Shown here: positions 2,564 to 55,722 of the stretch, one piece after another
Numbering within the stretch: position 1 is the first letter of the stretch
Layout: each line of letters opens with the position of its first letter
Source of the DNA: Ginglymostoma cirratum
Lineage: Eukaryota
DNA: 64,000 nucleotides
Direction of reading: 5' to 3'
NCBI GenBank assembly: GCA_024137785.1
Contig: JAHRHZ010000027.1
Location: 40,929 to 104,928 of the forward strand
The notes under the pieces: model-generated
The model's database searches: none
Seen by the model: only the letters and a program-made list of their open reading frames with translations
What the model was told of the DNA's origin: nothing
Position numbers and translations under genes: made by a program

Positions 2564-2600
2564 CAGGAATGGAATGAATGAGGAGAATTGAAGTCCACAT
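2564..2600 (-). CDS. Receptor gene A, signal-peptide exon
   Basis: ATG TGG ACT TCA ATT CTC CTC ATT CAT TCC ATT CCT G|gtgagt = MWTSILLIHSIP, phase 1. Splices in frame to the V exon (..PVSGALWA). Homologous position to 35198-35237. Confidence 0.8.
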
Positions 2601-6837: not shown

Positions 6838-6841
6838 AATT

Positions 6842-24606: not shown

Positions 24607-24697
24607 CTAATGTTTTCTCATACACACTGTGACAGAAACAGAACAAATCACCAGGAGAGCGAAGATCACCCAGCGTATCACATTCCAGACAGCGTAA
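24607..24697 (-). CDS. Gene B transmembrane exon with NxxR motif and stop
   Basis: ttttgctcag|T TAC GCT GTC TGG AAT GTG ATA CGC TGG... = (S)YAVWNVIRWVIFALLVICSVSVTVCMRKH*, followed directly by donor gtgagt. Confidence 0.82.
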
Positions 24698-27600
24698 CTG
24701 AGCAAAATGGAAGAAAGACAAAATCATTTGATGGAAACGAGTCTGCTTCACATTTCAAACATTTATCTGCTGTTTATACTTCAATCTTAGCAGATTGTAG
24801 AAAGGGAAAGTAGCACAGCTCAGGGAGTTCAGTGGGAAAACTGAACTACAGTTTAATTTTTGAATGACATGAGCAATAGATAAAGGTCAGATGAAACAAG
24901 CTTCAATAGCATGTCCTGTAACACTCAGCATGTTGTTACAATTGCGGATTATAGGTTTGAACGGTTGTACATTAGTGGGAGGCACTGCAGTCTGGTGCAA
25001 TACTACAATAATGAGATGTCTCCTCAGTGAGTGAGGAACTCAGAACAGCACCATCACACACTGCTCTTTGCACCTTCGACCAGGCAAGTCTTACTCCGGT
25101 GGAGCCAGAGACATGTTTATCCTCTCCATTTGGGAACAATGTTTAACCCAGGGGATCTGAGGAGGAGGCGCTGACGGAGAATGTAATGCCCCTGTCAGTG
25201 ATACTCCAGGTAGCCTTGGCTCAACAAAACCTGTCCTTTCATTGCTTTGAAAGCTGGAACACTATGAGCTGAGATGAATATTGAAGTATTGAATTTTAAT
25301 GCTGAAAACAGTACTTGAATCTGGGAGGTGGCAAACAGAAAATTGGCACTTTCTATTATGAATTTCCATTTACATAAATGGCAACATTGTAAGGAAGGTA
25401 GCAGAATAGTGTTGTATAAAATTAGCCACCATTTCCATTCTGATGACTCAGAGTGTGAATTTTGAAAATTATTGTAAACCTTTATGCTAAATGACTTGTT
25501 CTCGATTGGAATCAATGCTGATGGAAATGTCGACAATGAAAATGTTCTACCTTTTACTGATAGACTTGGATCCTGAAGATGACCGTGTTCTTGTTGGTGA
25601 TAATGTGGTTGATGCTGTTGAGGAGATGTCACAGGTATATTCCCTTCCTATTGAGACATTAGATAACATTCAGCTTCATCTGAACGTCACTTGCAGACAA
25701 CCAAGAGAACGACCTTCACAAATGGAACCGCAGAATGTGTTGTGAATAATGGATTTGTTTTTCTCTCACTCCCCCTGGTTAGAGAGATGTGGTAGTGACC
25801 TAGTTTGGATATAATTTGTGTTTTGTTTCTCTCCTGGACATTGATGCATCCGTATTCTTATTGAAGCATATGAAAGGCTGAGGTTGGTGGGACTGTATTC
25901 CTGAGATCCCCTTTCTCATCATTTTCAAACATGAAGGGAAGTTTTAGCCGCAGAGCTGGTCACTGCCACTGGGGGCAGTGTATTCACGGCGAATCCAGCA
26001 GCCACTGCTCCGTCCTGTGATATCCTGTCATTACTTGATGAGCTTTCAATGTAATTTGGCATTTTGCCTCTAGTGTGGTATTTATATGTGATGAGGCAGT
26101 CTTTACGTTAGCTCCTGTCCCATGAGGACAAGGCATGGGTATTGTAGAACTGACAAATCAACAGATATCTATAACAGCTTGTGTTCTGAGCTTGTTTTAC
26201 AGCCACAGGCACTTCATGGTCTGAGCTGAAACTGAAGTATTCAGTCACATACAGCAGAACACTTCCATCAGCATGTCATGCTTAATGCGACCCAAACTGA
26301 GATGGAGTCTGACACTATTATTCCCTCAAGTCACATGCTCTGATACAGTGATGACTTTGTCTGTTATCACCATAACACATACAAGCTGTGAAATGTAACA
26401 AAGCTGGAGTGCAACATTTATGCATTTTCTGGAGTTACGTTAATTTTTGTCCATTTTCAAAAACGAATCAATGCTTTGTTCATAATTGTTCAGAAGTCAA
26501 AGAGACGCAAAGTGATGAGGTGCAGTAAATCATGTGACTAAAGAAACTGAAGCAATGAACAGTTTGAATAGCCATGAAATAAATTTGTCAGCCTTAGTGC
26601 CTGNNNNNNNNNNNNNNNNNNNNNNNNNNNNNNNNNNNNNNNNNNNNNNNNNNNNNNNNNNNNNNNNNNNNNNNNNNNNNNNNNNNNNNNNNNNNNNNNN
26701 NNNNNNNNNNNNNNNNNNNNNNNNNNNNNNNNNNNNNNNNNNNNNNNNNNNNNNNNNNNNNNNNNNNNNNNNNNNNNNNNNNNNNNNNNNNNNNNNNNNN
26801 NNNNNNNNNNNNNNNNNNNNNNNNNNNNNNNNNNNNNNNNNNNNNNNNNNNNNNNNNNNNNNNNNNNNNNNNNNNNNNNNNNNNNNNNNNNNNNNNNNNN
26901 NNNNNNNNNNNNNNNNNNNNNNNNNNNNNNNNNNNNNNNNNNNNNNNNNNNNNNNNNNNNNNNNNNNNNNNNNNNNNNNNNNNNNNNNNNNNNNNNNNNN
27001 NNNATATAATTTGTGTTTTGTTTCTCTCCTGGACATTGATGCATCCGTATTCTTATTGAAGCATATGAAAGGCTGAGGTTGGTGGGACTGTATTCCTGAG
27101 ATCCCCTTTCTCATCATTTTCAAACATGAAGGGAAGTTTTAGCCGCAGAGCTGGTCACTGCCACTGGGGGAAGTGTATTCACGGCGAATCCAGCAGCCAC
27201 TGCTCCGTCCTGTGATATCCTGTCATTACTTGATGAGCTTTCAATGTGATTTGGCCTTTTGCTTCTAGTGTGGTATTTATATGTGATGAGGCAGTCTTTA
27301 CGTTAGCTCCTGTCCCATGAGGACAAGGCATGGGTATTGTAGAACTGACAAATCAACAGATATCTATAACAGCTTGTGTTCTGAGCTTGTTTTACAGCCA
27401 CAGGCACTTCATGGTCTGAGCTGAAACTGAAGTATTCAGTCACATACAGCAGAACACTTCCATCAGCATGTCATGCTTAATGCGACCCAAACTGAGATGG
27501 AGTCTGACACTATTATTCCCTCAAGTCACATGCTCTGATACAGTGATGACTTTGTCTGTTATCACCATAACACATACAAGCTGTGAAATGTAACAAAGCT

Positions 27601-30600
27601 GGAGTGCATCATTTATGCATTTTCTGGAGTTACGTTAATTTTTGTCCATTTTCAAAAACGTATCAATGCTTTGTTCATAATTGTTCAGAAGTCAAAGAGA
27701 CGCAAAGTGATGAGGCGCAGTAAATCATGAGACTAACGAAACTGAAGCAACGAACAGTTTGAATAGCCATGAAATAAATTTGTCAGCCTTAGTGCCTGTA
27801 TAAAACTTACTGAAGCTGCTGACCTGTATCATGTAATTCTCTCTGCTCCCCTGGTAACTGACACATCAACGATTTTAGTGGATTTTGTTCCCTGAGTATT
27901 TGAAGCTGTGCAGTAATATTGACGATGTTGATGTGTGAAGGATTGACAATGTAGATCCAGTTTATTGGTGTCAGAGATCTTTGAATCTTGAGATGGGGTC
28001 TTCCCAGACCATGTGTACTGAATGGGGCGGATCTCCGGGCAGACTCACAGGACATTGTCGCTGAGACCCCAGAACATGAGATAATTGGTTGTGATAAAAA
28101 TTGAAGTTCAGAAACAGAGATAGCTTCTTTGGGAAAGCAACAATTGTTGAGAAATCGATTGCAATCCATTCAGGGACAATATTGGGGTTCCTGATACTGA
28201 AGGCTCTTACCCTCTGAGGTGCGAGCTACCGATGTGAACATAGAGGGAGTGAGGGACAAATCCAGACATGCTCCATTTATTTTTAACAAACACCAGCAGA
28301 CAGACCATAACATAGCTTTTCCACAGAAGCTGCCTCCGTTCCTGGGCTTCAATTTCATCACAACCAAATGTTTCATGTTCTGCGGGCTCAGTGACAATCT
28401 CCTGTGTGTCTGCCCAGGGATGCCTCCCTAGTCACTACACATGGTCTGTATAGTGAAAGAGTTACCATGTCAGCCATTGTAACAGAGCAAATCAGCTTTC
28501 CCAATCAGAGCAGCAACAATGATACTGAGGACAATTCATCAAGAATATTATGGTTAACCCCATGGTTAATATTTTGACTTCATCACCGATAGTTAGTCTC
28601 CAATTAAATGGAAATTTTTGTGCCTTAAATCAGAATTTGTCAGAGGGAATTGGGCAATATGACAGCAGAAAATGAGGACAAAGAATTGCCCAACATCAGT
28701 TTGATGCTTTGAATGTTTAGGTGAGAATGTGAATGGATTTGGCTCCAGTTCTGTGCAGGTGAAATAGAATGCTTCAATCACAATCCGAGAAGGTGGGGAG
28801 GGTGTATCTGTACTGCCAGGAAAAATGAAAGGCCATGGAAGAGGAACTTGTGCCAATTGTAATGGTAATCCTTCATCAGAATTCTTTCACAGTGATGTCA
28901 GTTGGCTCCTGGGAAGAGATTAGAAATTGGTGTGGGATTGGAAAACAGCAGGAAAGTGAGTCAAGGAGACTTTGTTAGTTTGAGGCAGGCTTGGCCGAAC
29001 ATGGTAAGAGATTGTGGCAAAACACTGTCTTGAGACCTGGGATAAATCAGTTCAGTATCTCAAGGTTCAAAATCTGTGCCGGATCCACCAGCTCCCACCG
29101 AGCGTCAACACAATCCAGGATGGGGAAAGAGAGTGAAAATTCCCTTAAATGCATGTTGTCCATCAATAAAAAGCAGTTTTAATTTTCAGGGATTATTGGA
29201 GGTGTTGCAATGATTAGGCAGGCTATTGGTAGCATTTTATGCACCTGCTCATTTACCAAGTACATTGCAAACTGTTGGCGTTGTTCAGAACTGATGGTGA
29301 AATAAATGGAGTGCATTTTATCAATTGCAGTTTTCCAGAGCGAGTTAATAAACAACGAGTTTGAATGGACATTCATTTAAAAAGAAATCACATTGTTTGC
29401 TTCACACTTACCGATGCTGTTGGTTTGCACTGTGTAACTGCAGTTCGTCTCTGTTACATTGTTGACTGACACATGAACAATTTCACTGGATTTTGCTCCC
29501 TGAGTATTTGAGGCTGTGCAGTAATATTGATGATGTTGCTGTATGAAGGATTGACAATGTAGATCCAGTTTATTGGTGTCAGAGATCTTTGATTCTTGAG
29601 ATGGGGTCTTCTCAAACCATGTGTAGTGAATGGGGAGGGATCCCCGGGCAGACTCACAAGAGATTGTCACTGAGCCCCCAAAACATGAGACATTTTGTTG
29701 TGATGACAATCTAACTGCAGGAACAGAGACAGCTTCTGTGGGAAAGAAACAATTGTTCAGGAATTCATTGCCATCGAATAATCAAATATCCTCAAAAACT
29801 TTGTCACCTTACTTCCAGGATTAAACATTGATCAGATCTATCAGTGGAGAGTAATAAAAAAAAATCACTGAGATGCATACCTTCAGAAATGTTCAGATAT
29901 ACATTAAACATTAGGTCTAAGCCATATTTCTCAATCCCACAGCTGTACCATCCTGCATCTCCCCATTGAAGATTCTTCATTGTCACAAGAAATATTCCTT
30001 CTGCTTTGTTTTCAGTGATTGATATTCTCCCATTTGGCCAGTTTGTTGCTGCTGTAACATTACACTGACGATTCCATCCGTGACACCAATATTTCACATT
30101 TGACTGGTACCACTCTGCTTCGTAGTGGCAATGTATTGTAATCGCTCTTCCCAAAATTCCTGTTACATGATTCTCTACCCATAAAGCACCTGAAACTGAG
30201 GAGAAAATATCTCAGAAATTTGACTGGAAAGTTTAGCTGAATACAAACAGATGCATTTTAATCAGACACATTCTATTAAGTTTATGATGAGGGTAGTCAT
30301 GAATAAAAACCCTGATCAGAGCCTCAGGGTGTTAAAAATTCACAGGGAATGATCTATTCAGTTGGGATATTTTCTTACCCCACTGCTCGAGCTCTGGGGC
30401 AGTCTTGAAACTGTATTTGTGCTGTATGTTTTGGGCTCTAACTCCACTGTGTGTGGCATCATTGAAATGTTGCCCTCCTGGAGACGAGCCTGAGTGACAG
30501 GCCTGGATTGGAGTCGGATGGGGATTAGTGCGAAGGAGGCTATAGGCGCTGAAGGTGTTTGCTCCAAAAAGAGAAGGAAGGTTTCATCCAGGGAAGAGAG

Positions 30601-33600: not shown

Positions 33601-35237
33601 TTTGGGATGTGTCCTTCTTGAAGCTGCCATCGTTGGAACACATTTGTAAGAGGAAGAACAACTGGGAAAATGGAACAGAATCTTTTCAGAAAGTAGGGGG
33701 TCAGGATGTATAGTCAAGGTAACTATGGGTTTGTAGTGGGTAGCAGAGGCTAGCCTATCTCCGGAAATGGAAACAGAAAACAAATCAACTGTCTGCTTTT
33801 GTTATAGAGCCTCAGAAAATAATATTTAATGAATGGCAATTTAGAAATAAAGTGAATAATTACAAAATCAAGATGTTTTCTTTGAAGGCTTATTACCACT
33901 CTGGTATTTTGAACAACTGACTACATAAAAAACTTTGGATTGATGAAAATGAGCTCTCGTTTTGATGATGCTGCTTGTGTCACTATTAAAAAAAAATCAT
34001 ATTGTCATTTCCATTTCATTCTGAATTAATACTGCTGTTCTGAACTATTTGGTAACTATGTCCCATTTTATGATAATATTTTCAAAAGAAAGTATAACAT
34101 CTCTCGACATTGTTCATGTATTTTTACATTTTTGTTCCTTAAAACTTCAAAGACTATGATATTTAGAGGTGCATGGGGCAGACGAAGCACTCGTGTTCTG
34201 CAGCTGGTTCTTCCTGGCATAGGTCACTAGCCTGAAGTTAGTTTCTGCAATGTAAGAGCTGTCACTCGTGTTATGGACCAGACCAGACCCCTCAAAACAT
34301 TTTAAGAATATAGCCTCAACCCTAACTTGTTCATATTTTAAAAGTAGATGTGAAGTGCTATGTTGCAGATGCAATGTAACTGGTCAAACTACTTGACTTT
34401 AAGCAAAATATCACTTATTTAAACACCATAGTAAAAATACAAGCAAAGAAAGAGGAAGCAGAATAATTTACCTATTGGAAAACTTAACCGAATAATAGAA
34501 ACAGGAGCCGTTACTAACCAACCTTTCCAATATAGTAACATTCCATAAACACACCATTTGGCAGAAGGGAAAATTGTCACATATACTTCTCCAATCCAGG
34601 AGGAAAAATCATCAAGAGAAGATACAGAGAGTGTACCAGTCGGGAGACGTTCACCGATACTCCCAATTCTGTTGAGACCCCAATGGCTTCTGCTTAAAAC
34701 TAAACCTAAAAACTACAAACACGAGAGAGCCTGGACTGTGAGACCTGGCCACACCCAGACTGCTTCCATTGTTTCAAGTTTAGAAGAAAAACAAGGCCTC
34801 ACAAATTTGACACAGATACTTCTGCTTTATGATCTCTCTTCAAAACAAAACCGGGACAAAATAATCTTTGAAAGTGACAGCATCGACACACCCTGCATTG
34901 GATAAGGCTGACCTGCAATCTCACCCACTCTTGCTCCTTGCCATGGGTACGTTCGAAGGATTTGCAGTTCGATAATGAACCTGTTTATCAGAATACACAT
35001 TCCATTGCAAAATATGCTGGAGAGTGAATCAAACATTCAGCATCTGTAAAAGCAATAAAGATGTCCCCCACTGTGTCACAAGATATTCATTTGTGCCTTT
35101 ACATATCTCCAAATATTTATATCTCTATTGGATAAACCAGACAGCGGACATCAACAAACATTGATTATCTGAATAAGCAGCTCGAATGGTCACTCACTGG
35201 GAATAAAATGGATGAAGAGAATCAAAGACCACAACAT
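24607..35237 (-). CDS. Receptor gene B: activating-type V-C2-stalk-TM Ig receptor (CD300/pIgR-like V; MDIR-like), ~288 aa
   Basis: Exons 35198-35237, 29881-30195, 29412-29735, 25551-25647 and 24607-24697, all with GT-AG boundaries. Phases 1/1/1/2 are compatible, total 867 nt, open frame ending in TAG. Confidence 0.82.
25551..25647 (-). CDS. Gene B Ser/Thr-rich stalk exon
   Basis: caatag|(G)REYTCDISSTASTTLSPTRTRSSSGSKSISK(S)|gtagaa, phase 1 to 2. Counterpart of 49029-49107. Confidence 0.75.
25809..27798. repeat. 795-bp near-identical direct duplication flanking an N gap (probable haplotype/assembly artefact)
   Basis: 25809-26603 matches 27004-27798 with a few SNP-like differences. Both copies abut the gap 26604-27003. 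Confidence 0.8.
27811..28126 (-). pseudogene. Decayed duplicate C2-domain exon inside gene B
   Basis: Homologous to 29412-29735 (EAISVSELQF..SCESAR). It has a 1-nt deletion in the GSLPI codons and a total length of 316 nt (not 3n). AG and GTAAGT splice sites are retained. Confidence 0.8.
29412..29735 (-). CDS. Gene B Ig C2-type (FCRL-like) exon
   Basis: EAVSVPAVRLSSQQNVSCFGGSVTISCESARGSLPIHYTWFEK...LDLHCQSF..YYCTASN..NCSY. Acceptor ccacag, donor gtaagt, 324 nt. Confidence 0.9.
29881..30195 (-). CDS. Gene B Ig V exon (CD300/pIgR-like)
   Basis: GRAITIHCHYE..KYWCHGWNRQC..GRISITENK..FLVTMKNLQWGDAGWYSCG; 315 nt, phase 1-1. Confidence 0.92.
32490..33780 (-). mobile_element. Penelope-like element fragment (GIY-YIG endonuclease end)
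   Basis: ORF 32720-33178: GEMKRRLGDRFAE..PVVCHFN..KLKEQHFIFCLGILQ..FNIEF. Confidence 0.75.
34269..34888. mobile_element. Probable solo LTR in gene B intron 1
   Basis: ~620-bp TGTT...GACA insert splitting a sequence that is contiguous in the gene A paralog (gtcactctgcgctggataaagctgacc near 2243). Confidence 0.55.
35198..35237 (-). CDS. Gene B signal-peptide exon
   Basis: ATG TTG TGG TCT TTG ATT CTC TTC ATC CAT TTT ATT CCC A|gtgagt = MLWSLILFIHFIP, phase 1. Confidence 0.8.
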
Positions 35238-38200: not shown

Positions 38201-38792
38201 TATTCACACATTTTTTTACAGTGTCAATCTACGTTGAATATCAAAATATGCAATAAACGTGGAAACATTTTCTTCAGATCTCAAATTTTGAATAAAAACA
38301 AAGTTGCTGGAAAATCTCAGCATGTCATGCAGCATCTGTGAAGCAAAAAACAGAGTTAATGTTTTGGGTCCAGTGGCCGTTCCTCATTCTGAGGAACAGT
38401 CACCACACCCGAAACGTTAACTCTGTGATTTTATCAATTCCCAGCATCAGGCACCTCTAACTGATGCTCGCTGTCCTGCCACCATGGCTTGAGATGAGGT
38501 TGACCATGGATGGAGATCTACACATTGGTCCTGTCTCTCCTTCCTTTAAAACACAGTTTGGCCCTGTGCCTGTGGTATTCAGTCAGTTGTGTTGTGCAGT
38601 GGTGAAGTATTTGTGAATCGGAAGGCAGGAAGCTAGAATTTGTTGGTAAAAATGATGGTGGGGAAAAGAGTGATGAGGCTTTTTTGTGCGTAGGGTTTTT
38701 TTTTAGAAAAGTGTGTCTGTGAGTGTATCTGGAGGTTGCTCAGACAGAGAGCCTCAAAAAGTAAAACAAGTGTATCCAAAAAAAAGCCTCTA

Positions 38793-38866
38793 CTACACCG
38801 TGTCAGAAACAGCACAAATCACCAAAAGAATGATAGCCACCCAACATATCACATTCCAGACAGTGG
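38793..38866 (-). pseudogene. Orphan decayed copy of the activating TM exon
   Basis: Reads TVWNVICWVAIILLVICAVSDTV**, aligning to gene B AVWNVIRWVIFALLVICSVSVTVC. The Arg codon CGC has become TGT and no clear acceptor remains. Confidence 0.7.
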
Positions 38867-38905
38867 AAATCAATAATCTCTTCCTCCAATGCTATTCTTA
38901 TTTCA

Positions 38906-44282: not shown

Positions 44283-44582
44283 CTAGTACTTACCTTCAGC
44301 ATAAATTGCCATTTCAGATTCTGGCAAATTCTCTACTTTTGGAGTTACGACATTGCTCCCTGGGAGCTGGTTTTGAACCTTGGCATTGCCCCTGGTAACT
44401 GAGTAACTTGTTGTCTCACCACTCCGTGCTGATGACTTCTTTTGAAACTGCAGCTCTGCATATATGACTCCATTTGTATTATTCTTCAAATGGGCAGTTC
44501 CTTCACTCTGTATTCCTCTTGATCTACTTTGCTTGTGCTTTATAGTTGAATATACAATGTTCTCTTCAGCTCCTACCATTTG
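44283..44582 (-). CDS. Gene C cytoplasmic exon with ITIMs
   Basis: ttttgttttag|QMVGAEENIVYSTI...GVIYAEL...MAIYAEGKY*. IVYSTI and VIYAEL fit the I/VxYxxI/L consensus. Confidence 0.85.
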   Translation of the reverse strand, partial: QMVGAEENIVYSTIKHKQSRSRGIQSEGTAHLKNNTNGVIYAELQFQKKSSARSGETTSYSVTRGNAKVQNQLPGSNVVTPKVENLPESEMAIYAEGKY

Positions 44583-47500
44583 CTAAAACAAAACACAAAG
44601 TTGAATTCATTTTTAATTAATCTTAACAGTGATTTGATTTGCAAAGAGGGGAAATCTATTTTCAGATTGTCAGACATTAATTGACAAACTGTTGCAAAGT
44701 TTTATGTTATCTCGCGCTGGAACGAACAACTCGGTCTGATAAGTTCATCCACACGAACCAGTTCACATCGGTCTTCATTTAACCCCAACAATATATTCAT
44801 CGAATCCTTTCTAGCTCAGGTACTTATCCAACTTGCATGTGAAGTGGCAGATCGGCATGATTGCAGTGTAGATCACAGCATATATTTACAAAGGAATACA
44901 CTGACAAACTGAGTGATAGGGAAACATTGTGGCAGATGGGGTTCAATGTAAGCAAGTGTGAGGTGATCCATTTTGGGGTGTACAAGGATTGATTAGGATA
45001 CTTTCTGGATGATATGAAGTCATATATAGTGGATGTCCGAAGAAACTTGAGCCTTCGAATGCATAGATCTTTAAAATGTCAGAAACAGGTACAGAAAATA
45101 ATCAAGGAAGCTAATGGAATTCTGACCTTTATAACCAGAGGACTGGATGATAAGGATGCAGAAGCTGTGCTGCAGTTTTACAAAACCCTACATAGATCCT
45201 ACTGGGAGTACTGTGAGCAGATCTGGAACCACACCATAGGAAGGATATATTGGCTTTGGAGGCAGTACAATGTAGGTTTACAGGAATGCTACCTGGGCTT
45301 CTGGGGTTAAGGTATGAGGAGAGATCATACAAATTATACCTGTTTTCTCTAGAATTTAGAAGGGTAAGGAGTGATCTGATTGAAATCTTCAGGGTATTAA
45401 TAGAACAAGACAGGGTAGATAAGGATTAATTGTTTCCACCAGTTGGGGATTTTTAAACTGGGGCCATTGTCTGAGAATTCGGGCCAGGCCATTCAGGTGA
45501 GCTATTAGAAATCACTCTATGCACAAAGGGTGGGAGATATTTGGAACTCTGTGACTGAAGAAGCCCAAGTGAAGGATGACAACATACAATTCATACAAAA
45601 GGTGTACACCCTAGTGGTGACCAGTGGAAGTAGACATTGGGGGACAGTAGGATTTGGGTTGATCGTCTTTTGTTATTCATAATGTTTTTCTGCTTTTGTG
45701 TCAATACATTGAACTCTTCAGAAACAGGTGGAAATGCAGGTTGGGAAGTGTCAGCAAATCTGAAGTCACGATTAAACGCTTAACAAAGTCTCATTTTAAA
45801 TTGTAAAGACTACTCATCCTCTCTTTCTGCCGATCAATTAGAATATTCAGAGTTAAACCAAACCAAGAGCTAGTTCAGTCAAGTGGCATTGACATATTTA
45901 AGGAGAATCTCAAGAAAAACAAGAGGACAAAAGAAATAGAAGCTTCTGTTGATCGGGTTAGTTAGAGAGGTGATGGGAGGAACCAATCGTTGTGATTGGC
46001 ATGTTTCTGTGCTGTTAGTTCAATATGTAAACCTGAAAAATTACAACATTGCAGTTGAAATATCTGTGATGAGAATGGAGGATATTTTCACAATGGCTAA
46101 ATCGACCACATGTTGCAGCCTTACATTGATTTGGTCTTTTCTTCTTCTTAAATTCTGTGCATGAAGACAGGTCTGACCCACAGCATTGTGGTTTTCACCC
46201 AATGTGCAAAGCAAGAATAAACTTCCTGAATGCACCCTGAGCCAGAACAGGGATTGAACCCCATAACGTTGGTACCAATCTGTGCCAGGTGTCAATTCAA
46301 TCTGGTCCTGCCAACAGCTTCCCTGCCCCCTCCTTGTCCCATCCAGTGGGCCTCAGTTGCTGTGGCAACATAAACATTTACAAGTGTGCGGCATCTATGG
46401 ATCATAATTTCGTCAAGAACTGTGGATCCTGGAGAAGCTCAGCAGGCCTGGCAGATGAAGATAAAGAGACACTGGATTCAAATTGTTAATTCTGCTTTCT
46501 TCCCCCAGATGCTGCCAGACCTGCTGAGTCTCATGTTAGATTTGAACCTGACAAGATCCAGTCCTGCAGAGAATCTGGAAACTCTTTGGGGTTATTAGTC
46601 AATATTTCAATATTGGTCATCTGACTCTCAAACTAACTCACTTGAAGATGAAGTTCTGGTCTTGAATTTGCCTGCAACTGATTACAATTGGATCAAATGC
46701 AAGAAGTTTGGCTCATTAAGTCCTAAGTACTTGCAATTGTAATGTGCTTGTTTCAAAAATGTGAAAAATCAAGGTCTCTAAATTTCAGTTGGACCTAATC
46801 CTTTCCTGTTATTCATTTCTGTCAGGCTAAACCAATGTTGACTTTTACTTCCTCCAGACTCCACCTGTCATTAGCTAGAAATAAAAATCATACTTCTATC
46901 TTTATCTGAACCAGAATGTGCAACAAGTTACGATAGTTTGTTAATTAACGTTTGCTAACTACGATGAACTGCAATCCCTTTTTAATCTGCAGCAAGTTAT
47001 TGACATATAATGAAACGATTGAGGAGAAATTGAAACTCACCCTTGTTGACTTGCCTCAGGTACAAAAACAGTGAAACAGCAAAAACAATGAGCATGGCCC
47101 CCAGTACACCGACCACAATGTAAACAGGACTGCGATATACAGAATAGCAAAGGGTCAGTTCACTGCTCACTGTTGGCTCTTGGGCACTTATTTAAAGAAA
47201 GGAAGCTTGAACATTTATAGAGCATCTTTCATGACCTTTGAATGGCCTTAAGGAAATACCTTTAAATGTTTGTCAGTGTCTGAAACAGGAAATTAAACGC
47301 CTGATTTCTATAGAGAAAAATCCTTGAAGCAGCAATGAGATATGACCAAATAAGAATTGGCAACATCTGCATGAGAGCGCTTCATCTGCTTTCTCCAAAC
47401 AGAAGGCCTGACTTGCTGTGTGCTTCCTGCTCTCTCTATTTCTGTCTATTGTTTCACTTCTCATTTCTATTTTGTTTGATATTTTGCTTTTTTTTACTCT

Positions 47501-50500
47501 GCTACTGCCACTGTAAATTCAAAGGATCAGTTCTGCAGCGTTGATATCAGGCTACAATTTCTGACACTTATTGTCAGCATCTTGGGCAAAGAGCATGGAA
47601 ATGAAAAGTAAATTATGCAAAATGAGCATGTACATCACAAATGAAAATGGAAAGATTGCCTTCAAGCATTGACTTAACATGACACAATGTCCAGCTGCCA
47701 CCAATGAATACCCAGTTGTTCCAGTACTGGCTGACTGTGAATACAGGACACATCATCTCAGAGATATAGAGTCATAGATAAAGTCATTGAGTTGTACGGC
47801 ATGGAAACACACCCTTTAGTCCAACTCATCCGTGCTGACTAGACATATCAATGTGGCACAGTTCCATTTGACCCATTTCCCTGTAAATTCTTCCGATTCA
47901 TATACCCATCCAGATTCCTTTCAAATGTTGTAATTGTTGTACATACTTCCACCACTTCCTCTGGCAGCTCATTCCGTACATGCACCACAATGTTCATGAA
48001 AAAGTCACTGCTCAGGTCCTTTTTAAATCTTTCCTCTCTCACCTTAAACCTATGTCCTCTAGTTCTGGACCCCCCCTACCCTGGGAAAAAGACCTTGGCT
48101 ATTCAGTTATCAACTCCCCTCATGATTTTATAAAGCTTTACAAAGTCAATCCTCAGCCTCTGATGCTCCAGGGAAAAAAGCCCCAGTTTATTCAGTCTCG
48201 CCCGATAACTCAAATCCTCCAGTTCCAGCAACATACTTGTAAATCTTTTTTGCACCGTCTCAACTTTAACACTGTTTTTCCTATAGACACACTGTGCAAT
48301 GCCAATATCTGGAGAATCTATGTGTAAAATCTTGACAACATTACTCACCATCACCTCACGACTTATAGCAGCAAAAAGGACTCATCAAATAACATCATGT
48401 GAACAGACTTCCTGTAAACAGTAGTCCATTCTGCCTTTATAATATATATTTTATTTACTTGGGTGAGGTGGTACATAACAGCATTTAAAAAGCATCTGGA
48501 TGAGTATATGAATAGGTAGGGTTTAGTAGGGATATGGGCCAATTGCTGGCAATTGGGACTGGGTCAGATTGGGCTGTCTGGTCACTGTGGATGAGTTGGA
48601 CCTGAGAATCTGTTTCCATGTTGTATGATTCTATGATTCTATCTGTGACCCTACAGTGTGCTGTGTCTGATATTTATTCACATCACAGTGGGAATACCAT
48701 CAAGAAGAAAGCCTCCTCACTGCAAACTTGACCAAAGTTGCAAGATGTTCCTCCCAAGTGATACCAAGGCTGAGCAGATTTATTAATGTAATTTCTCATT
48801 TTCACCCACAGAAGAGCAACTTTTCCATTAGTTCCACACCGAACTGATAATTGCACATAGCACACTTTGTTAAGAAGCTAATGTAACAGTCAGTCCGGCC
48901 CCATTTCCATTCTGGGATCTACATTGTGAAATAAGAAATAATTTCCTTCATGATTAACAAGATGTTGTTCAAGAGGATTTAATCTCTCATGTGGAAGGTG
49001 TCAAACCCTAACGATGTGATAATTGTACCTTATATCAAGTTGAGGCATGACTTTTGAATTTGTAGTTGTCACCAATACTGATGAAGTTTCAGAACAGTAA
49101 TCAGCTCCTGTTGAAACAAATGAATAACATTCAGATTAACCTCATTTTTACTCTAGTTAACCAAAACAGCAACATTGTCAAATGGAACCTTTAGCTGATA
49201 TAATGGATTTGGAAGGTGTAATCTCTGTGTCATCCCCACAGCCCCACTACCAGGACAATCCCACTCTGAACTGCCAGTGACTAATCTTTCATGGCAGTTT
49301 CTAATTGTTTCCCATATCTCAAGGATGGATGTACAGCATTACCTATTGAGCCTGTCAATGTATTCCAATGCTGACATCCTCTTTAAGTACTTACATCAGG
49401 GCCAGGGCTTGAGCATAAAACTTAATGCTGTCACTCCAGTGCATTGGTGAAGGAGTGCCACAGTGTTGGCAGTGCTTCCTTTGCGATGAGATGTTAAACT
49501 GAGACTTTCTCTGCCAACTCTGCTTGACCCATGGCATTGTCTTGAAGAAGAGTAGGGCAGTTATTCCAAATGTCCTGGACAATATTTATCCCCCAATTCA
49601 AAATGGATTATCTGGTTATTTTCACATTGCTGTCTGTGGGAATTGGCTCGATACAAATTGATTGCTGCATTGCAGGAGTGAGGAAACTTCAACAAGCAAA
49701 GGCGGCTAATGCTTCAAACATCCATTAATTACACTGAGTCACTCGCATTTTAGATAAACTCTCTTACACTCTCTCCTGACATCCTTCATGAAGAGGACAC
49801 AAGAGATGGAGGTAACAATTTCATCTGCTAAAAATAGCTATTTCATCTGTTGAAGACTCGGTCAATGCAAGCACATTTTACCATTCAGGGGTTACTTTAT
49901 CCACGTAGTTGCGATATTTTACAATCCTTTCCAAATTCAACTAATTGATCTTGCTCAGATCTACTGAAAGACCAGATCGAGTAAATTTGGCCAGTTGCAA
50001 TTTTTCAGACTGACTGCAGGAATATAACCTGCAACTAGTTTGCTAGAAATTTTTATTTTGACAAATCAACAATTAAATTGTTTGTTTACAGTATAACTTA
50101 CCGCTGGTGCTGATTTGCACCACATAACTGCAGTACCCCCCTGATCTGTGGATGACTGACACATCAACCTTTTCACTAAGCTTTCCTCCCTGAGTATTTG
50201 ACGCTGTGCAGTAATGTCGATGATGTTGCTGTGTGAAGGATTGACAATGTAGATCCAGTTTACAGGTGTGAGAGATCTTTGAATCTTCAGACGGGGTCTT
50301 TTCATACCATGTGTACTGAATGGGGAGGGATCCGTGGACAGGTTCACAGGAGATTGTCACTGAGCTCCCAGAACATGAGGCATTTGGTGAAGATGATAAA
50401 AATCTAAATATAGAAACAGAGACAGGTTCTGTGGAAACGAAGCAAACATTCAGATACTGCCTGAACAACATTCAAACACTGTTCCTATTTCCAACATTTC

Positions 50501-53500
50501 TACCCCTCATCCAGGGCCTGTATGTTGGAGAATCCCCAACACGTCTCCCTCCCCATGTCTCTCCAACTTCCCAATAATGTGAATTCCCATGTCTACTGGT
50601 ATAACAGAACAGAGGAAGGCTCTAAATCAGGGCAAATGCAATGATACTGAGCATGTGTCAATGTGGAAATCAGGGCCGTTATTTTCTCTCGGTAACAGAT
50701 AGCCAGATTCCAAGCCTTTAGCTGGCTGAATGTTTCATTCCCAAATGGAAAGCTGTTGGAGAGAGCCTTACATTAAAATGGAACAGTAAAAGAGAATAAA
50801 TTGTCAGATACCTGTTGCAACTTTTCATGCCTTAAACAGGGAGTATAAATGTGCTTTGTCCCACTTGACTGCGATTGAAAAGGATACTTTAATTCAAAAA
50901 TTCAGATGGTGATGAGAATTAGCGTTTCTGGGGTTCTGAAACCTCGCAATGTTGCATAAATGGATCTTATGTCAGGTTTACTGGCTACTTCAATGTGCCC
51001 AGGTTCAATATGTTGAAGCCATAATATTTTGAGTTTCATGTTTTCACTGAATTGAATCCTGCCCAATATTAGGGTTAGGGTCAGGGTTAGGGTTAGGTGT
51101 TGGGCTTGGGGTTGGGATTAGGGTTAGGGATAGGATCAGAGCTGTCATTCGGGTTAGGGTTTACTTTACAGCAACCTGCTTTAGACTTAAAGAAGTTTGA
51201 TGCCTGTGAGATGTTCAAATGTGCTTATTTGACTGAGATGAGCACTTTAGTGCAAACAGTAACAGAGTTTATGAAGTTTGATGACTGTTCCATTTGGGTG
51301 AATTGGTGTGGAGTTACATTTTCCCTTTTATCTGTAAAGAGAGTAATCAGAACACATCGGTGACCAGATACATTCTAAGGACAACTCATGGGAGGAGCTA
51401 ACCAGGTTCTCCTTGTGTCCTACAAGTTCTCATGTGCTCACCACAGAATGTGCAATGTTTCAGTGATTGTCCTTCACGTCAGCGGAATTTATAATGTACG
51501 TAATCTAATTTGATCCAGATTGTTTTGCAAGAGGCAATCGTGTGCCTTAGATATAAAGCAATGTGCTATGAAGTAATGTGTAATAATCCAATCTGCTGTT
51601 CGATCGAGGTCAAAGTGATATTCTACGAAAGACAGTGCATGGCCATTCCTCAAAAGTGATATCACTGAGCTAGATTAATACTAGCAAAGATAACAAGGTG
51701 TGGGGCTGGATGAACACAGCAGGTCAAGCAGCATCATAGGAGCAGGAAAACTCGACGTTTCGGGCCTAAACCCTTCAGGGTTTAGATAACACCTTGTTAT
51801 CTCGTATTCTCCAGCATCTGCAGTACCTTTTATCTCTAATACTAGCAAAGAGATTGGTGGCAGGAAATCTGCTGAAAACGTCTCAGAATAATTTATTGTA
51901 ACACATCCCAGAGCCCTATGCCCAACCAGGATGGACTGGTTGGACCGAAGGGTCTGTTTCCATGCTATGTGCGTCTATGACTCTATGGTGCCCCCTGCTG
52001 CTAAAGGGACAAAAGTCACCCTCCATTCACTTAACTCTGTACTCAGTGTTAAATGGCTGCAGGCAGCCAATGGGGAACAGAGGTGTAAACCCTCATAACT
52101 TTTTACCTGGTGGAGGGCAAGGAGGACAAGAATGACAGCACTCCAATTAATCGAATCTGACGTTTTTAGATCACTTGTCTTAGCCTTAAATTTCCAATTC
52201 TTTTAACAAAGCTTTGGGATACCTGCCCTCCCATTGCAAAACCCCTTCACTGCTGCAGGGCATCAGGATAGTGAAGCTATTATGGATCTCTCACAGATAA
52301 AACAAAGAACAAAGAACAAAGAAAATTACAGCACAGGAACAGGCCTTTCGGCCCTCCAAGCCTGCGCCGAACCAGATCATCTATCTAAACCTGTCACCTA
52401 TTTTCCAAGGATCTGTATCCCTCAGTTCCCTGCACATTCATGTATCTGTCTAGATACATCTTAAATGACGCTATCGTGCCCGCCTCTACCACCTCCACTG
52501 GCAACGCGTTCCAGGCACCCACCACCCTCTGTGTGAAGAACTTTCCACGCATATCTCCCTTAAACTTTTCCTCTCTCACCTTGAAATCGTGACCCCTAGT
52601 AATTGAGTACCCCACTCTGGGAAAAAGCTTCTTGCTATCCACCCTGTCTATACCACTCATGATTTTGTAGACCTCAATCAGGTCCCCCCTCAACCTCCAT
52701 CTTTATAATGTAAATAATCATAATCTACTCAACCTCTCTTCATAGCTAGCGCCCTCCATACCAGGTGCCCTCCATACCATCCTGGTGAAACTCCTCTGCA
52801 CCCACTCCAAAGCATCCACATCCTTTTGGTAATATGGCGACCAGAACTGTAAGCAGTATTCCAAACGTGGTCGAACCAAAGTCCTACACAACTGCAACAT
52901 GACCTGCCAACTCATGAACGCAATACCCCGTCCAATGAATGAAAGCATGCCATATGCCTTCTTGACCACTCTATCGACCTGCGTTGCCACCTTCAGGGTA
53001 CAAGGGACCTGAACACCCAGATCTCTCTGTGTATCAATTTTCCCCAGGGCATTTCCATTTACCGTATAGTTCGCTCTTGAATTGGATCTTCGAAAATGTA
53101 TCACCTCACATTTGCCCGGATTGAACTCCGTCTGCCATTTCTCCGCCCAACTCTCCAATCTATCTATACCCTGCTGCATTCTCCGACAGTCCCCTTCGTT
53201 ATCTGCTACTCCACGAATCTTAGTGTCATCTGCAAACTTGCTAATCAGACCAGCTATACCTTCCTCCAAATCATTTATGTATATCACAAACAACAATGGT
53301 CCCAACACGGATCCCTGTGGAACACCGCTGGTCACAGTTCTCCATTTTGAGAAACTCCCTTCCACTGCAACTCTCTGTCTCCTGTTGCCTAGCCAGTTCT
53401 CTATCCATCTAGCTAGTACACCCTGGACCCCATGCAATTTCACTTTCTCCATCAGCCTACCATGGGGAACCTTATCAAATTCCTAACTGAAGTCCATATA

Positions 53501-55722
53501 CATGACATCCACAGCCCTTCCCTCATCTATCAACTTTGTCACTTCCACAAAGAATTCTATCGAGGTGATAAGACATGACCTTCCCTGCACAAAACCATGC
53601 TGCCTATCACTAATAAGCCCATTTTCTTCCAAAGGTAAATAGATCCCATCCGTCAGTATCTTCTCCAGCAGCTTCCCCACCGCTGACGTCAGGCTTACCG
53701 GTCTGCAATTACCTGGATAATCCTTGCTACCCTTCTTAAACAAGGGGACAACATTAGCAATTCTCCAGTCCTCCGGGACCTCACCCGTGCTCAAGGATGC
53801 TGCAAAGATATCTGTTAAGGCCTATTTCCTCTCTCGCTTCCCTCAGTAACCTGGGATAGATCCCATCTGGACCTGGGGTCTTGTCCACCCTAAGGCCTTT
53901 TAGAATACCCAACACTTCCCCCCTCCTTATGCCAATTCGACCTAGAGTAATCAAACATCCATCCTTTACCTCAACATCCGTCATGTCCCTCTCCTTGGTG
54001 AATACCGACGCAAAGTACTCATTAAGAATCTCACTCATTTTCTCTAACTCTTCGCATAAGTTCTCTCCTTTGTCCTTGAGTGGGCCAACCCTTTCTCTAT
54101 TTACCCTCTTGCTCCTTATGTACGAATAAAAGGCTTTGGGATTTTCCTTAACCCTGTTTGCTAATGATATTTCATGACCCCTTTTAGCCCTCTTAACTCC
54201 TCGTTTCAGATTGGTCCTACTTTCCCGATATTTTTCCAAAGCTTTGTCTGTTTTCAGTCACCTAGATGTTATGTATGCTTCCTTTTTCCTCTTTGCTAGT
54301 CTCACAATTTCACCTGTCATCCATGGTTCCCTAATCTTGCCCTTTCTATCCCTCATTTTCACAGGGACATGTCTGTCCTGCACTCTAATCAACCTCTCTT
54401 TAAAAGCCTTCCACATATCAAATGTGGATTTACCGTCAAATAGCTACTCCCAATCCACATTCCCCAGCTCCTGCAAAATTTTGCTATAGTTGGCCTTCCC
54501 CCAATTCAGCACTCTTCCTTTAGGACCACTCTCGTCTTTGTCCATCAGTATTCTAAAACTTATGGAATTGTAATCCCCTAGTGAAACTTCAAACACCTGG
54601 CCGGGCTCATTCCCCATCACCAGGTCCAGTATGGCTCCTTCCCAAGTTGGACTATTTACATACTGCTCTAGAAAACCCTCTTGCATGCTCCTTACAAATT
54701 CTGCTCCGTCTAAACCCCTAACACTAAGTGAATCCCAGTCAATGTTGGGAAAATTAAAATCTCCCATCACCACCACCCTGTTGCTCCTACATCTTTCCAT
54801 AATCCATCTACATATTTGTACTGCTATCTCATGCTCACTATTGGGAGCCCCAACGTTGTTACAGCACCCTTCCGATTTTGGAGCTCTGCCCATATTGACT
54901 CACTGCTCAAGTCCTCCATAGTGTCCTCCTTCAGCACAGCTGTGCTATCCTCTTTGACCAGTAATGTAACTCCTCCACCCCATTACCTCCCTCTTTATCC
55001 CACCTGAAGCATCTATATCCTGGGGTATTTAGTTGCCAATCTTGCCCTTCCCTCAACCAAGTCTCAGCAATAGCAATGACATCATACTCCCAGGTACTAA
55101 TCCAAGCCCTAAGTTCATCTGCCTTAGCTACTACACTTCTTGCATTAAAACAAATGCACCTCAGACCACCTGTCCCTTTGCGTTCATCATCTGCTCTCTG
55201 CCTACGCTTCCCCTTAGTCACACTGACTTCATTATCTCGTTCCTTACAGGCTTTAGTTACTACCTCCTTACTGTCCACTAACCTCCTCATTTGGTTCCCA
55301 TCCCCCTGTCACATTAGTTTAAACCCTCCCAACAACATTAGCAAAAGCACCCCATAGGACATCGATAAAACATCTCAATAGAGAATAATCAATTATATCA
55401 CTGAGAAATATACCATGAGATATTTGTAGGTCTACAGCAGACACTGAAATGTGGGCAGATCGGTCAAAACCACAGCTGTGCCATCCTGCATCTTCTGAGC
55501 GAAGATCTTCCATTGTAACAGAAAATATATTTTGTGTCTTGTTATCTATGATTGACATTCTTCCTCGCTGTTCATGATGGTCAGTTGATTTTACTAAAAC
55601 AGAGCACTGGCGACTCCAAAATTTCATGTATAACTGTGACCATTTGTCATAGTGACATTCTATTGTGATTGCTATTCCCAAAACTCCTGTTACTTTATTT
55701 TTTGCTGACATTACAGTTGAAC
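44283..55722 (-). CDS. Receptor gene C: inhibitory-type V-C2-stalk-TM-ITIM Ig receptor (signal exon not found)
   Basis: Exons 55414-55722, 50102-50428, 49029-49107, 47041-47129, (46849-46874 tentative) and 44283-44582. GT-AG boundaries, compatible phases 1/1/2/1/0, no internal stops. Confidence 0.78.
44880..45550 (+). mobile_element. CR1 LINE 3' fragment
   Basis: Degenerate KCEVIHFG, VLQFYKTL..EYCEQIW remnants. Confidence 0.7.
46849..46874 (-). CDS. Candidate gene C mini-exon (ANDRWSLEE)
   Basis: tttttatttctag|CT AAT GAC AGG TGG AGT CTG GAG GAA|gtaaaa. Supplies the required phase 1 to 0 bridge, but the donor is weak. Confidence 0.45.
47041..47129 (-). CDS. Gene C uncharged transmembrane exon
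   Basis: tatcgcag|(S)PVYIVVGVLGAMLIVFAVSLFLYLRQVNK G|gtgagt. Confidence 0.85.
47770..48285 (-). mobile_element. CR1 LINE 3' fragment
   Basis: VQKRFTSMLLELEDLSYRARLNKLGLFSLE..RNELPEEVVE on the minus strand. Confidence 0.8.
49029..49107 (-). CDS. Gene C stalk exon
   Basis: tttcaacag|(G)ADYCSETSSVLVTTTNSKVMPQLDI(S)|gtacaa, phase 1 to 2. Confidence 0.72.
50102..50428 (-). CDS. Gene C Ig C2-type exon
   Basis: EPVSVSIFRF..ASCSGSSVTISCEPVHGSLPIQYTWYEK..LDLHCQSF..HYCTASN..YCSY; 327 nt, ccacag/gtaagt. Confidence 0.9.
51069..51161 (+). repeat. Degenerate interstitial telomeric (TTAGGG)n tract
   Basis: ttagggttagggtcagggttagggttaggtgttgggc...ttagggttaggg. Confidence 0.75.
51691..51836. mobile_element. 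Short hairpin element with 15-bp TSD
   Basis: TAATACTAGCAAAGA at 51676-51690 and 51837-51851. Confidence 0.8.
52305..55363 (-). mobile_element. CR1/HER1 LINE (end of ORF1 region plus full ORF2, frameshifted) in the gene C V-C2 intron
   Basis: CICFNARSV, IAETW, GDFNFP, QHGF, GVPQGSVLGP, KFADDTK. (TTCTTTG)n tail. GATAAAACA direct repeats at 52296-52304 and 55364-55372. Confidence 0.93.
55414..55722 (-). CDS. Gene C Ig V exon (CD300/pIgR-like, 4-codon deletion in the C strand)
   Basis: GSTVMSAKNKVTGVLGIAITIECHYDK..KFWSRQCSV..RGRMSIIDNKTQNIFSVTMEDLRSEDAGWHSCG; 309 nt. Confidence 0.85.

What the first reader, a model, noticed from the sequence alone, without database searches (positions are those of the whole stretch)
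24607..55722. Adjacent paired activating/inhibitory Ig receptors with shared V+C2 ectodomains in a shark
Seen: genes B and C have homologous V, C2 and stalk exons with identical intron phases but opposite signalling ends. Gene B has TM WNVIRW (NxxR) and a tail of only a few residues. Gene C has a neutral TM plus ITIMs IVYSTI and VIYAEL. A third paralog (A) starts at the left edge. Established: an N-terminal TM Arg in an NxxR context is the FcR-gamma-association motif of LILRA/PIR-A/GPVI/OSCAR/FcaRI, whereas mammalian activating CD300s mostly use a mid-TM Lys with DAP12. ITIMs recruit SHP-1/2. Inference: this is a paired-receptor family mixing a CD300/pIgR-type V domain, an FCRL-like C2 domain and a leukocyte-receptor-complex-style TM. 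It could be an Ig/Fc or pathogen receptor system. It may correspond to the MDIR family described from skate, so novelty must be checked.
Basis: partly seen in the sequence, partly recalled or inferred. Interest (0 to 1): 0.8.

Follow-up and report, generated by a model that had tools for sequence, protein, structure and literature searches.

The report
Shark MDIR activating and inhibitory receptor genes
Two neighbouring shark immune-receptor genes, one built to switch cells on and one to switch them off, are really there, but they belong to the MDIR receptor family already described from skate in 2006, so this is an ordinary new example rather than a new system.

Summary
Gene B has a leader, a V exon, a C2 exon, a stalk exon and a membrane exon with WNVIRW followed by a stop. 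Gene C has V, C2, stalk, an uncharged membrane exon and a tail with the ITIMs IVYSTI and VIYAEL. Gene A starts near 2600 and runs off the left edge.

The assembly gap lies inside gene B's intron 3. The 795 bases on each side of it are 98.7% identical direct copies, so it looks like an unmerged contig overlap. No exon or reading frame depends on it.

The V domain resembles pIgR and CD300, and the C2 domain resembles FCRL5. The genes belong to the known elasmobranch MDIR family. They are 53–60% identical to named skate MDIR2, and the membrane exon matches MDIR5. The bamboo shark has the same inhibitory-then-activating neighbours.

Four qualifications apply:
- B and C are not a matched pair. Their V domains are 45% identical and fall in different old lineages.
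- Gene C's 5′ end is not in the window, and its relatives are (V-C2)x2.
- Only W-x-V-x-R-W is conserved in the membrane exon, not NxxR, so the FcRγ inference is weak.
- No RNA support could be obtained.

This scan had already noted the same family at three other places in this genome.

The parts
35198..35237 (-). Gene B leader exon (MLWSLILFIHFIP plus 1 base, phase 1, GTGAGT donor)
   Evidence: matches the leader region of Hemiscyllium and Chiloscyllium relatives
29881..30195 (-). Gene B V-set exon (phase 1/1; a second acceptor lies 6 nt downstream at 30189)
   Evidence: (PF07686 1.5e-9)
29412..29735 (-). Gene B C2-type Ig exon (phase 1/1, GTAAGT donor)
27841..28157 (-). Dead duplicate of the C2 exon in B intron 3 (1-bp deletion, in-frame stop, no donor)
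28318..28448 (+). Inverted partial copy of the C2 exon
27004..27798 (.). 795-nt block starting at the gap, a 98.7% copy of 25809-26603
25809..26603 (.). 795-nt block ending at the gap (probable uncollapsed contig overlap)
25551..25647 (-). Gene B stalk exon, 97 nt, phase 1 in and phase 2 out (G-REYTCD..., Ser/Thr-rich)
   Evidence: 73.5% identical to the stalk of P0009
24607..24697 (-). Gene B membrane exon with WNVIRW; the stop TAG abuts a GTGAGT donor
55414..55722 (-). Gene C V-set exon (phase 1/1; lacks 4 residues including one Cys of the extra disulfide)
52394..55290 (-). LINE-type reverse-transcriptase insertion in gene C's V-to-C2 intron
50102..50428 (-). Gene C C2 exon (phase 1/1)
49029..49107 (-). 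Gene C stalk exon, 79 nt, phase 1 in and phase 2 out (G-ADYCSE...)
47041..47129 (-). Gene C uncharged membrane exon (phase 2 in, phase 1 out)
46045..46154 (-). Gene C candidate cytoplasmic exon, 110 nt (phase 1 in, phase 0 out), needed to read the ITIM tail in frame
   Evidence: 53% identical to residues 499-529 of P0153
44283..44582 (-). Gene C tail exon with ITIMs IVYSTI and VIYAEL, ending in a stop
   Evidence: (72% identical to P0153)
38796..38861 (-). Relic activating-type membrane exon (WNVICW, Arg changed to Cys, no acceptor, double stop) between B and C
2564..2600 (-). Gene A leader exon (MWTSILLIHSIP plus 1 base)
1..210 (-). Gene A V exon, cut by the window edge (75% identical to V_B)

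Best explanation
The window holds part of a tandem array of elasmobranch MDIR (modular domain immune-type receptor) genes on the minus strand. Each ectodomain module is a CD300/pIgR-like V exon followed by an FcR-like C2 exon. Both exon types are phase 1/1, so modules can be added, dropped or exchanged.

Gene B is an activating-type member. It has a leader, V, C2, a Ser/Thr-rich stalk with a conserved Cys, and a membrane helix with an Arg near its outer end (WNVIRW). About five residues follow in the cytoplasm. By inference, the Arg pairs with an acidic residue in an ITAM-bearing adaptor chain, which carries the signal.

Gene C is an inhibitory-type member. It has an uncharged membrane helix and a tail with two canonical ITIMs. 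By inference, these recruit SHP-type phosphatases once phosphorylated.

Shown here: the exons, the phases, the homology to named MDIRs, and conservation of the neighbouring inhibitory and activating genes in the bamboo shark.

Inferred only: expression, the adaptor, phosphatase recruitment and the ligand.
For: - Exon anatomy and frames.
- Pfam V-set and Ig matches.
- PDB relatives are pIgR/CD300/TREM2 for V and FCRL5/FCRL4 for C2.
- A profile search found 22 representatives with alternating V-C2 architecture. Every one that was looked up or named is from an elasmobranch.
- Named skate MDIR2 and MDIR5 lie inside the family.
- V_B is 53% and C2_B 60% identical to MDIR2 (1e-38 each), B's membrane exon is 52% identical to MDIR5's (8e-8), and C's tail matches MDIR2's ITIM region (8e-6).
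- Chiloscyllium P0198 (299 aa) has gene B's exact layout and ends ...WDVIRW...RKH.
- Chiloscyllium P0153 is colinear with C followed by B.
- W-x-V-x-R-W occurs in 26 of 69 family proteins from sharks and rays.
- The literature describes MDIRs as multigene activating/inhibitory receptors resembling CD300, TREM, FCAR and pIgR: PMC3031540, citing Cannon et al. 2006.
Against: - There is no RNA support. Four runs laid on 24450-30350 gave reads only on the C2 exon. Most were 95-99% alike, which points to paralogues. There was zero depth on the stalk and membrane exons and no splice joints.
- The one loose end at the C2 donor continues into sequence that is not in the window.
- Gene C has no leader in the window. 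Its ITIM exon is in frame only through a weakly supported 110-nt exon with a GTAATT donor. Splicing straight to the first acceptor would hit a stop.
- The small conserved cytoplasmic exon ending in ...ETQ that relatives carry was not found.
- The adaptor is unknown. FcRγ was reported absent from shark data in 2014 (PMC4016189).
Confidence: 0.82

Rival explanations
1. B and C are a true paired receptor. On this reading they are a recent activating/inhibitory duplicate pair that keeps the same ligand-binding ectodomain and so gives opposite signals to one ligand, as in KIR2DL/2DS or PIR-A/B.
For: The genes are adjacent and in the same orientation, with the same exon plan and phases. The C2 exons are 81% identical in DNA with dS of only 0.19.
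Against: - The membrane-distal V domains are 45% identical with dS 0.82.
- They sit in different clades, each with 100/99 support and each holding bamboo and epaulette shark orthologues.
- V_C lacks one Cys of the extra disulfide and is an internal domain in all relatives.
- The membrane exons show no DNA similarity.
Confidence: 0.1
2. One or both genes are non-functional array members. B would be silent. C would lack its 5′ exons or be unable to read its ITIM tail in frame. On this reading the 'pair' is a genomic fossil.
For: - There are no reads on B's V, stalk or membrane exons beyond a trace.
- B's intron holds a dead C2 copy and an inverted fragment.
- A relic membrane exon lies between the genes.
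- C has no leader in the window.
- C's conserved small cytoplasmic exon is missing.
- An earlier follow-up on a neighbouring copy found a degenerate anchor (s1-879319).
Against: - All eleven coding exons of B and C are open, with AG/GT boundaries and compatible phases.
- C's 99-codon tail is open and ends at the same position as in relatives.
- B's stop position (…KH) is shared with Chiloscyllium and Hemiscyllium models.
- The tissue of the one informative raw RNA run is unknown and only about a quarter of it was read.
Confidence: 0.25
3. The gene B model is an assembly artefact. The Ig exons to the right of the gap and the stalk and membrane exons to the left of it would then belong to different genes.
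For: A 400-N gap lies between the C2 and stalk exons. The family is a repetitive tandem array, which is prone to misassembly.
Against: - The 795 bases on either side of the gap are direct, 98.7% identical copies that abut it. This indicates overlapping contig ends rather than a missing segment.
- The exon order V-C2-stalk-TM, and the residues across every junction, match single RefSeq models in Chiloscyllium (P0198, and the end of P0153) and Hemiscyllium (P0009).
Confidence: 0.05

Closest known systems
MDIR (modular domain immune-type receptors) of the clearnose skate, Cannon et al. 2006; here MDIR2 (P0174) and MDIR5 (P0157)
   Same: - The same two Ig domain types in the same order: 53% (V) and 60% (C2) identity to MDIR2.
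- The same stalk Cys.
- The same W-x-V-x-R-W membrane segment as MDIR5.
- The same ITIM context (…MYAAVQFQ… against …IYAELQFQ…).
- A multigene family with activating-type and inhibitory-type members.
   Different: - A different species and order (shark rather than skate).
- These are genomic copies rather than cDNAs.
- B's cytoplasmic tail is cut to about five residues, as in bamboo and epaulette sharks, whereas ray and skate forms keep about 20 residues.
RefSeq models in Chiloscyllium plagiosum: 'CMRF35-like molecule 8 isoform X1' (P0198) and LOC122562925 (P0153)
   Same: Probable orthologues. P0198 has gene B's layout. P0153 is colinear with gene C followed by gene B, with 72-81% identity per exon.
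   Different: P0153 is a read-through fusion of two genes. It carries an extra N-terminal V-C2 pair and an 18-residue cytoplasmic segment that are not found in the window.
Mammalian CD300/CMRF35 family and pIgR
   Same: A V-set domain with the extra Cys pair. CLM-1 scores 2.4e-16 and pIgR domains 3.9e-34 (summed). The CD300 family also has activating and inhibitory members.
   Different: CD300 proteins have a single V domain and no C2 domain. pIgR has only V-type domains. Activating CD300s mostly carry a mid-membrane Lys or Glu.
FCRL family and LRC receptors with NxxR membrane segments (LILRA, GPVI, OSCAR, FcαRI, Xenopus XFL)
   Same: The C2 domain's best solved relative is FCRL5. Gene B has N-x-x-R at the outer end of its membrane helix and a very short tail, like FcRγ-associated receptors (PMC2413239, PMC4536121).
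   Different: - FCRL and LRC receptors have no CD300-type V domain.
- The FCRL split leader (30/21 bp) is absent.
- The N is not conserved in the MDIR family.
- The membrane exon shows no demonstrated homology to LRC membrane exons.
Teleost, holostean and coelacanth DICPs
   Same: A multigene family with two Ig domain types (D1, D2) and inhibitory, activating and secreted forms (bioRxiv 10.1101/2021.06.11.448072).
   Different: The relationship was not tested here because no DICP sequence was in hand. The profile search found V-C2 relatives only in elasmobranchs.

Membership tests
MDIR (elasmobranch modular domain immune-type receptors) | Ig ectodomains homologous to those of the named skate MDIR proteins | tested here: met
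   One search returned MDIR2 and MDIR5 among relatives. V_B is 53% and C2_B 60% identical to MDIR2, 1e-38 each.
MDIR (elasmobranch modular domain immune-type receptors) | Modular ectodomain built from different Ig subfamilies in variable numbers | tested here: met
   V and C2 exons are all phase 1/1. Relatives range from VC to VCVCVC and up to 11 domains.
MDIR (elasmobranch modular domain immune-type receptors) | Members with a positively charged membrane residue and members with cytoplasmic ITIMs | tested here: met
   B has WNVIRW plus a stop, and its membrane exon is 52% identical to MDIR5's. C has IVYSTI and VIYAEL, and its tail matches the MDIR2 tail.
MDIR (elasmobranch modular domain immune-type receptors) | Large multigene family | tested here: met
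   The window has three genes, a dead C2 exon and a relic membrane exon. Earlier notes place further copies on both sides of the window.
MDIR (elasmobranch modular domain immune-type receptors) | Transcribed as spliced mRNA | tested here: inconclusive
   One search showed paralogue-like reads on the C2 exon only, with no joints and nothing on the stalk or membrane exons.
Paired receptors in the strict sense (KIR, PIR, LILR-like pairs) | Activating and inhibitory partners share a near-identical ligand-binding ectodomain | tested here: not met
   The V domains are 45% identical with dS 0.82 and lie in separate 100/99 clades.
CD300/CMRF35 | A single V-type Ig domain followed by a stalk; orthology to the CD300 cluster | tested here: not met
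   The V domain is CD300-like, but every copy carries an FcR-like C2 exon after it. Orthology was not tested.
FCRL | Ectodomain of C2/FcR-type domains only, with a split leader (30/21-bp rule, PMC2413239) | tested here: not met
   The first domain is V-set. Leaders are single exons, 40 nt in B and 37 nt in A.
FcRγ-associated receptors with an NxxR membrane segment | Conserved N-x-x-R at the N-terminal end of the membrane helix | tested here: inconclusive
   It is present in B (NVIR). In 26 family members the first position is D, K, T, M, S, E or N, and only W-x-V-x-R-W is invariant.
FcRγ-associated receptors with an NxxR membrane segment | Physical association with the FcRγ chain | not testable with these tools
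   This needs co-expression and co-immunoprecipitation. A 2014 survey reported no FcRγ in shark data (PMC4016189).

The most novel reading that the evidence does not exclude
The W-x-V-x-R-W membrane exon is shared by sharks, skates and rays. It may mark an ancient, still unidentified adaptor partnership in cartilaginous fish. A 2014 survey found no FcRγ, pIgR or FCRL in this lineage. On this reading the MDIR array, with its pIgR-like V and FcR-like C2 modules, would supply the missing Fc or polymeric-Ig receptor functions of elasmobranchs.
Probability: 0.2. Interest if true: 0.6.

Novelty: new member of a known kind. Interest (0 to 1): 0.3.

Why it matters
The value is for annotation and evolution rather than discovery.

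- **Exon-level models.** The report gives clean exon-level models for an activating and an inhibitory MDIR gene in a shark. Automatic names for the family are inconsistent: 'pIgR-like', 'FCRL5', 'CMRF35-like' and 'CXADR-like'. Some RefSeq models fuse neighbouring genes.
- **Conserved arrangement.** The inhibitory-then-activating neighbour arrangement is conserved between shark species.
- **Invariant membrane signature.** The invariant signature is W-x-V-x-R-W, not NxxR.
- **Exon-level mosaicism.** The C2 exons are much younger than the V and membrane exons.

Together these points give concrete constructs for testing which adaptor and which ligands this old receptor family uses.

Tried and rejected
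- **Word search with the V_C open frame:** no hit. The cause is the length window and word limits, not absence of relatives.
- **RNA evidence:** one run search and one read-laying run on gene B. There were no joints and no depth on the stalk or membrane exons. The loose-end continuations are not in the window, so those transcripts come from paralogues.
- **Locus DNA of relatives:** Relatives could be compared only as proteins.
- **Gene C's small cytoplasmic exon (…ETQ in relatives):** not found by splice, frame or motif scans. A candidate at 46642 has the wrong phase.
- **A leader for gene C:** the only candidate (56566..56530) has a poor donor and no similarity to the A and B leaders, so it was rejected.
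- **AlphaFold2 of the bamboo-shark relative P0198 with a 26-row alignment:** mean pLDDT was 52 and the C2 domain did not fold. No fold search was run.
- **The original MDIR paper and a review:** not held in the library. A whole-word 'MDIR' search returned only unrelated acronyms.
- All searches were exon by exon, by reference.
Full report
**What is in the sequence**

Every feature of the finding lies on the minus strand. A six-frame search with the V and C2 open frames found three V exons (at 210..1, 30195..29881 and 55722..55414). It also found two intact C2 exons (29735..29412 and 50428..50102), one frameshifted C2 copy (28157..27841) and one inverted C2 fragment (28318..28448). Pfam calls the V exons V-set (1.5e-9 and 8.5e-9) and the C2 exons Ig_3/Ig_2.

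**Gene models**

Relatives recovered later let me place the small exons.

Gene B has five exons:
- Leader 35237..35198.
- V 30195..29881.
- C2 29735..29412.
- Stalk 25647..25551.
- Membrane exon 24697..24607, whose stop codon abuts a GTGAGT donor.

The intron phases are 1, 1, 1 and 2, and the five exons add up to 867 nt, which is 289 codons.

Gene C has six exons in the window:
- V 55722..55414.
- C2 50428..50102.
- Stalk 49107..49029.
- An uncharged membrane exon 47129..47041.
- A candidate cytoplasmic exon 46154..46045.
- A 99-codon tail 44582..44283.

With one base from an upstream exon, these sum to 1215 nt, which is 405 codons.

Gene A has a leader at 2600..2564, and its V exon is cut by the window edge.

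The joined proteins were never built or searched.

**The assembly gap**

The gap (26604-27003) sits in gene B's intron between the C2 and stalk exons. The 795 bases that end at the gap (25809-26603) and the 795 bases that start at it (27004-27798) are 98.7% identical in the same orientation. This is what two overlapping contig ends look like when they are scaffolded with a gap instead of being merged. An unresolved tandem duplication is the alternative. Either way the flanks are collinear, no exon touches the gap and no reading frame depends on it. I did not try to fill it.

**RNA**

One run search gave two raw RNA runs of the same species label and some contig sets. Laying four runs on 24450-30350 gave 11 reads in the polyA run. 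Ten of them were only 95-99% alike, and nearly all lay on the C2 exon. Depth was zero over the stalk and membrane exons and there were no splice joints.

One contig ends exactly at the C2 donor (29411/29412). It continues into sequence that is absent from the window, so it comes from a paralogue.

The result is neither support nor refutation.

**What the domains resemble**

Against solved structures, the V exon is closest to pIgR domains (3.9e-34, summed over four stretches). Next come CD300f/CLM-1 (2.4e-16), other CD300s, TREM2, TIM-4 and NKp44. The C2 exon is closest to FCRL5 (2e-39 over five stretches) and FCRL4 (2e-5).

**Family membership**

The word search with the V_C open frame was blank, so I ran the exhaustive profile search with the three V exons. 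It returned 3072 hits. Twenty-two of the top 150 representatives carry alternating V and C2 domains. Every one that was looked up or named is a RefSeq or GenBank model from an elasmobranch: Hemiscyllium, Chiloscyllium, Heptranchias, Mustelus, Amblyraja, Leucoraja, Rhinoraja, Mobula, Hemitrygon, Hypanus, Pristis and Narcine. Rhincodon and Scyliorhinus models joined the family in the follow-up search. Their automatic names are inconsistent: pIgR-like, Fc receptor-like 5, CMRF35-like and CXADR-like.

A second word search, started from the thorny-skate member, returned 'Modular domain immune-type receptor 2' and '5' of the clearnose skate inside the same family. Direct comparisons gave:
- V_B is 53% and C2_B 60% identical to MDIR2, 1e-38 each.
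- B's membrane exon is 52% identical to MDIR5's (8e-8).
- C's second ITIM region matches MDIR2's tail (8e-6).

[quoted passage not shown] 2006. That original paper was not available to read. My recollection that it reports one to six modular Ig domains and FcR-homologue similarity is from memory. The family assignment rests on the sequence comparisons above, not on that recollection.

**Orthologues and arrangement**

Chiloscyllium 'CMRF35-like molecule 8 isoform X1' (P0198, 299 aa) has exactly gene B's layout and ends …WDVIRW…RKH. Chiloscyllium LOC122562925 (P0153, 954 aa) is a read-through model. Its parts line up in order with gene C's V, C2, stalk, membrane, cytoplasmic and tail exons, and then with gene B's leader, V, C2, stalk and membrane exons. 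Identity is 72-81% per exon, lower on the short stalk, membrane and cytoplasmic exons. The inhibitory-then-activating neighbour arrangement is therefore older than the split between these sharks.

P0153 and the Hemiscyllium relative P0021 have an extra V-C2 pair in front of the V_C-type domain. Nothing matching that pair, and no credible leader, exists in 55.8-64 kb of the window. Gene C is therefore probably (V-C2)x2, with its first half beyond the window or in a gap.

**Not a matched pair**

V_B and V_C are 45% identical, and V_C lacks four residues including one Cys of the extra disulfide. In a maximum-likelihood tree of V domains:
- V_B falls with the activating-type V domains of whale, bamboo and epaulette sharks (support 100/99).
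- V_C falls with the internal V2 of the inhibitory proteins of bamboo and epaulette sharks (100/99), and then with internal Mustelus domains (100/93).

Synonymous divergence is mosaic: 0.82 for the V exons, 1.2 for the membrane exons, but only 0.19 for the C2 exons, where dN/dS is about 1.1. This suggests exon-level exchange within the array. Outward-facing domains this different make it unlikely that B and C see the same ligand.

**The membrane motif**

Gene B does have N-x-x-R at the outer end of its helix. The literature supports the rule that such membrane segments associate with FcRγ in tetrapods, and this was shown experimentally for Xenopus XFL (PMC2413239, PMC4536121).

Across 26 MDIR-family proteins, however, the invariant pattern is W-x-V-x-R-W. 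The first x is D in B's closest relatives. It is K, T, M, E or N in skates and rays, and S in Heptranchias. The Arg and its position are what is conserved.

A 2014 survey reported no FcRγ, pIgR or FCRL in shark data (PMC4016189). That claim predates current genomes and overlooked the MDIRs, but it means the adaptor cannot be assumed. I keep 'Arg-mediated pairing with an acidic ITAM adaptor' as the likely mechanism and leave the adaptor's identity open.

**Weak points in gene C**

Relatives have a short cytoplasmic exon ending in …ETQ between the membrane and tail exons. I could not find it. The tail is in frame through the 110-nt exon at 46154..46045, which has a counterpart in the bamboo-shark model (53% identity) but only a GTAATT donor. 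It would also be in frame through a second acceptor 10 nt into the tail exon. Splicing the membrane exon straight to the first acceptor would give a stop after five codons. The 99-codon tail is open, ends at the same position as in relatives, and keeps both ITIMs at conserved positions, so I regard it as functional or only recently disabled.

**Other attempts**

- An AlphaFold2 model of P0198 was too poor to use (pLDDT 52).

**Verdict**

This scan had already reached the same family assignment for two other loci of this genome (s1-879319 and s1-879098) and had noted a third (s1-879905). My assignment rests on my own comparisons.

Noticed in passing
window 38796-38861 (-): A relic activating-type membrane exon (VWNVICW…) lies between gene B's leader and gene C's tail. 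It is about 78% identical in DNA to B's membrane exon. The Arg codon has changed to Cys, there is no acceptor AG, and it ends in two stops. It is probably the remnant of a lost activating gene.
   Followed up: partly
window 24478-24724 (-), alternative frame of B's membrane exon and the intron after it: Reading B's membrane exon in another frame and on through its donor gives a peptide (…HSVYEKTLGEYHGLYKNN…). It is 67% identical to the C-terminus of the Hemiscyllium model P0021 ('Fc receptor-like protein 5'). This is either an annotation artefact in that species or a conserved membrane-less isoform.
   Followed up: no
window 6491-15323 (+): An endogenous retrovirus-like element with gag-, pol- and env-like open frames (7480-14536). 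Near-identical flanking blocks at about 6491-6949 and 14934-15323 look like LTRs. It lies between gene A's leader and gene B. It is described only; another reader noted an extra domain in its Pol (s1-879675).
   Followed up: no
relatives P0153 (Chiloscyllium) and P0009 (Hemiscyllium): Both RefSeq models are read-through fusions of two adjacent MDIR genes. Each has a membrane segment, or a tail plus the next gene's leader, in the middle of the protein. Automatic names across the family are mutually inconsistent.
   Followed up: partly
relative P0007 (Narcine bancroftii, 561 aa): This elasmobranch protein has five V-type domains and is annotated pIgR-like. It sits among the top hits. This conflicts with the 2014 statement (PMC4016189) that cartilaginous fish have no pIgR homologue.
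   Followed up: no
window C2 exons 29412-29735 and 50102-50428, compared with the V and membrane exons: Synonymous divergence between B and C is 0.19 for the C2 exons but 0.82 for the V exons and 1.2 for the membrane exons. dN/dS is about 1.1 in C2. This suggests exon-level gene conversion or shuffling within the array.
   Followed up: partly
window C2 exon ends and stalk exons (29430 region with 25640 region; 50120 region with 49100 region): A Cys in …NCSY… at the end of the C2 exon and a Cys in the stalk motif x-Y-x-C-(D/E) are conserved across activating and inhibitory relatives, including MDIR2 and MDIR5. They may form a membrane-proximal loop or an interchain disulfide.
   Followed up: no
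window 57250-57303 and 57760-57813: The second assembly gap (57360-57759) is flanked by a short inverted match (54 nt, 93% identity). This differs from the direct 795-nt overlap at the first gap.
   Followed up: no
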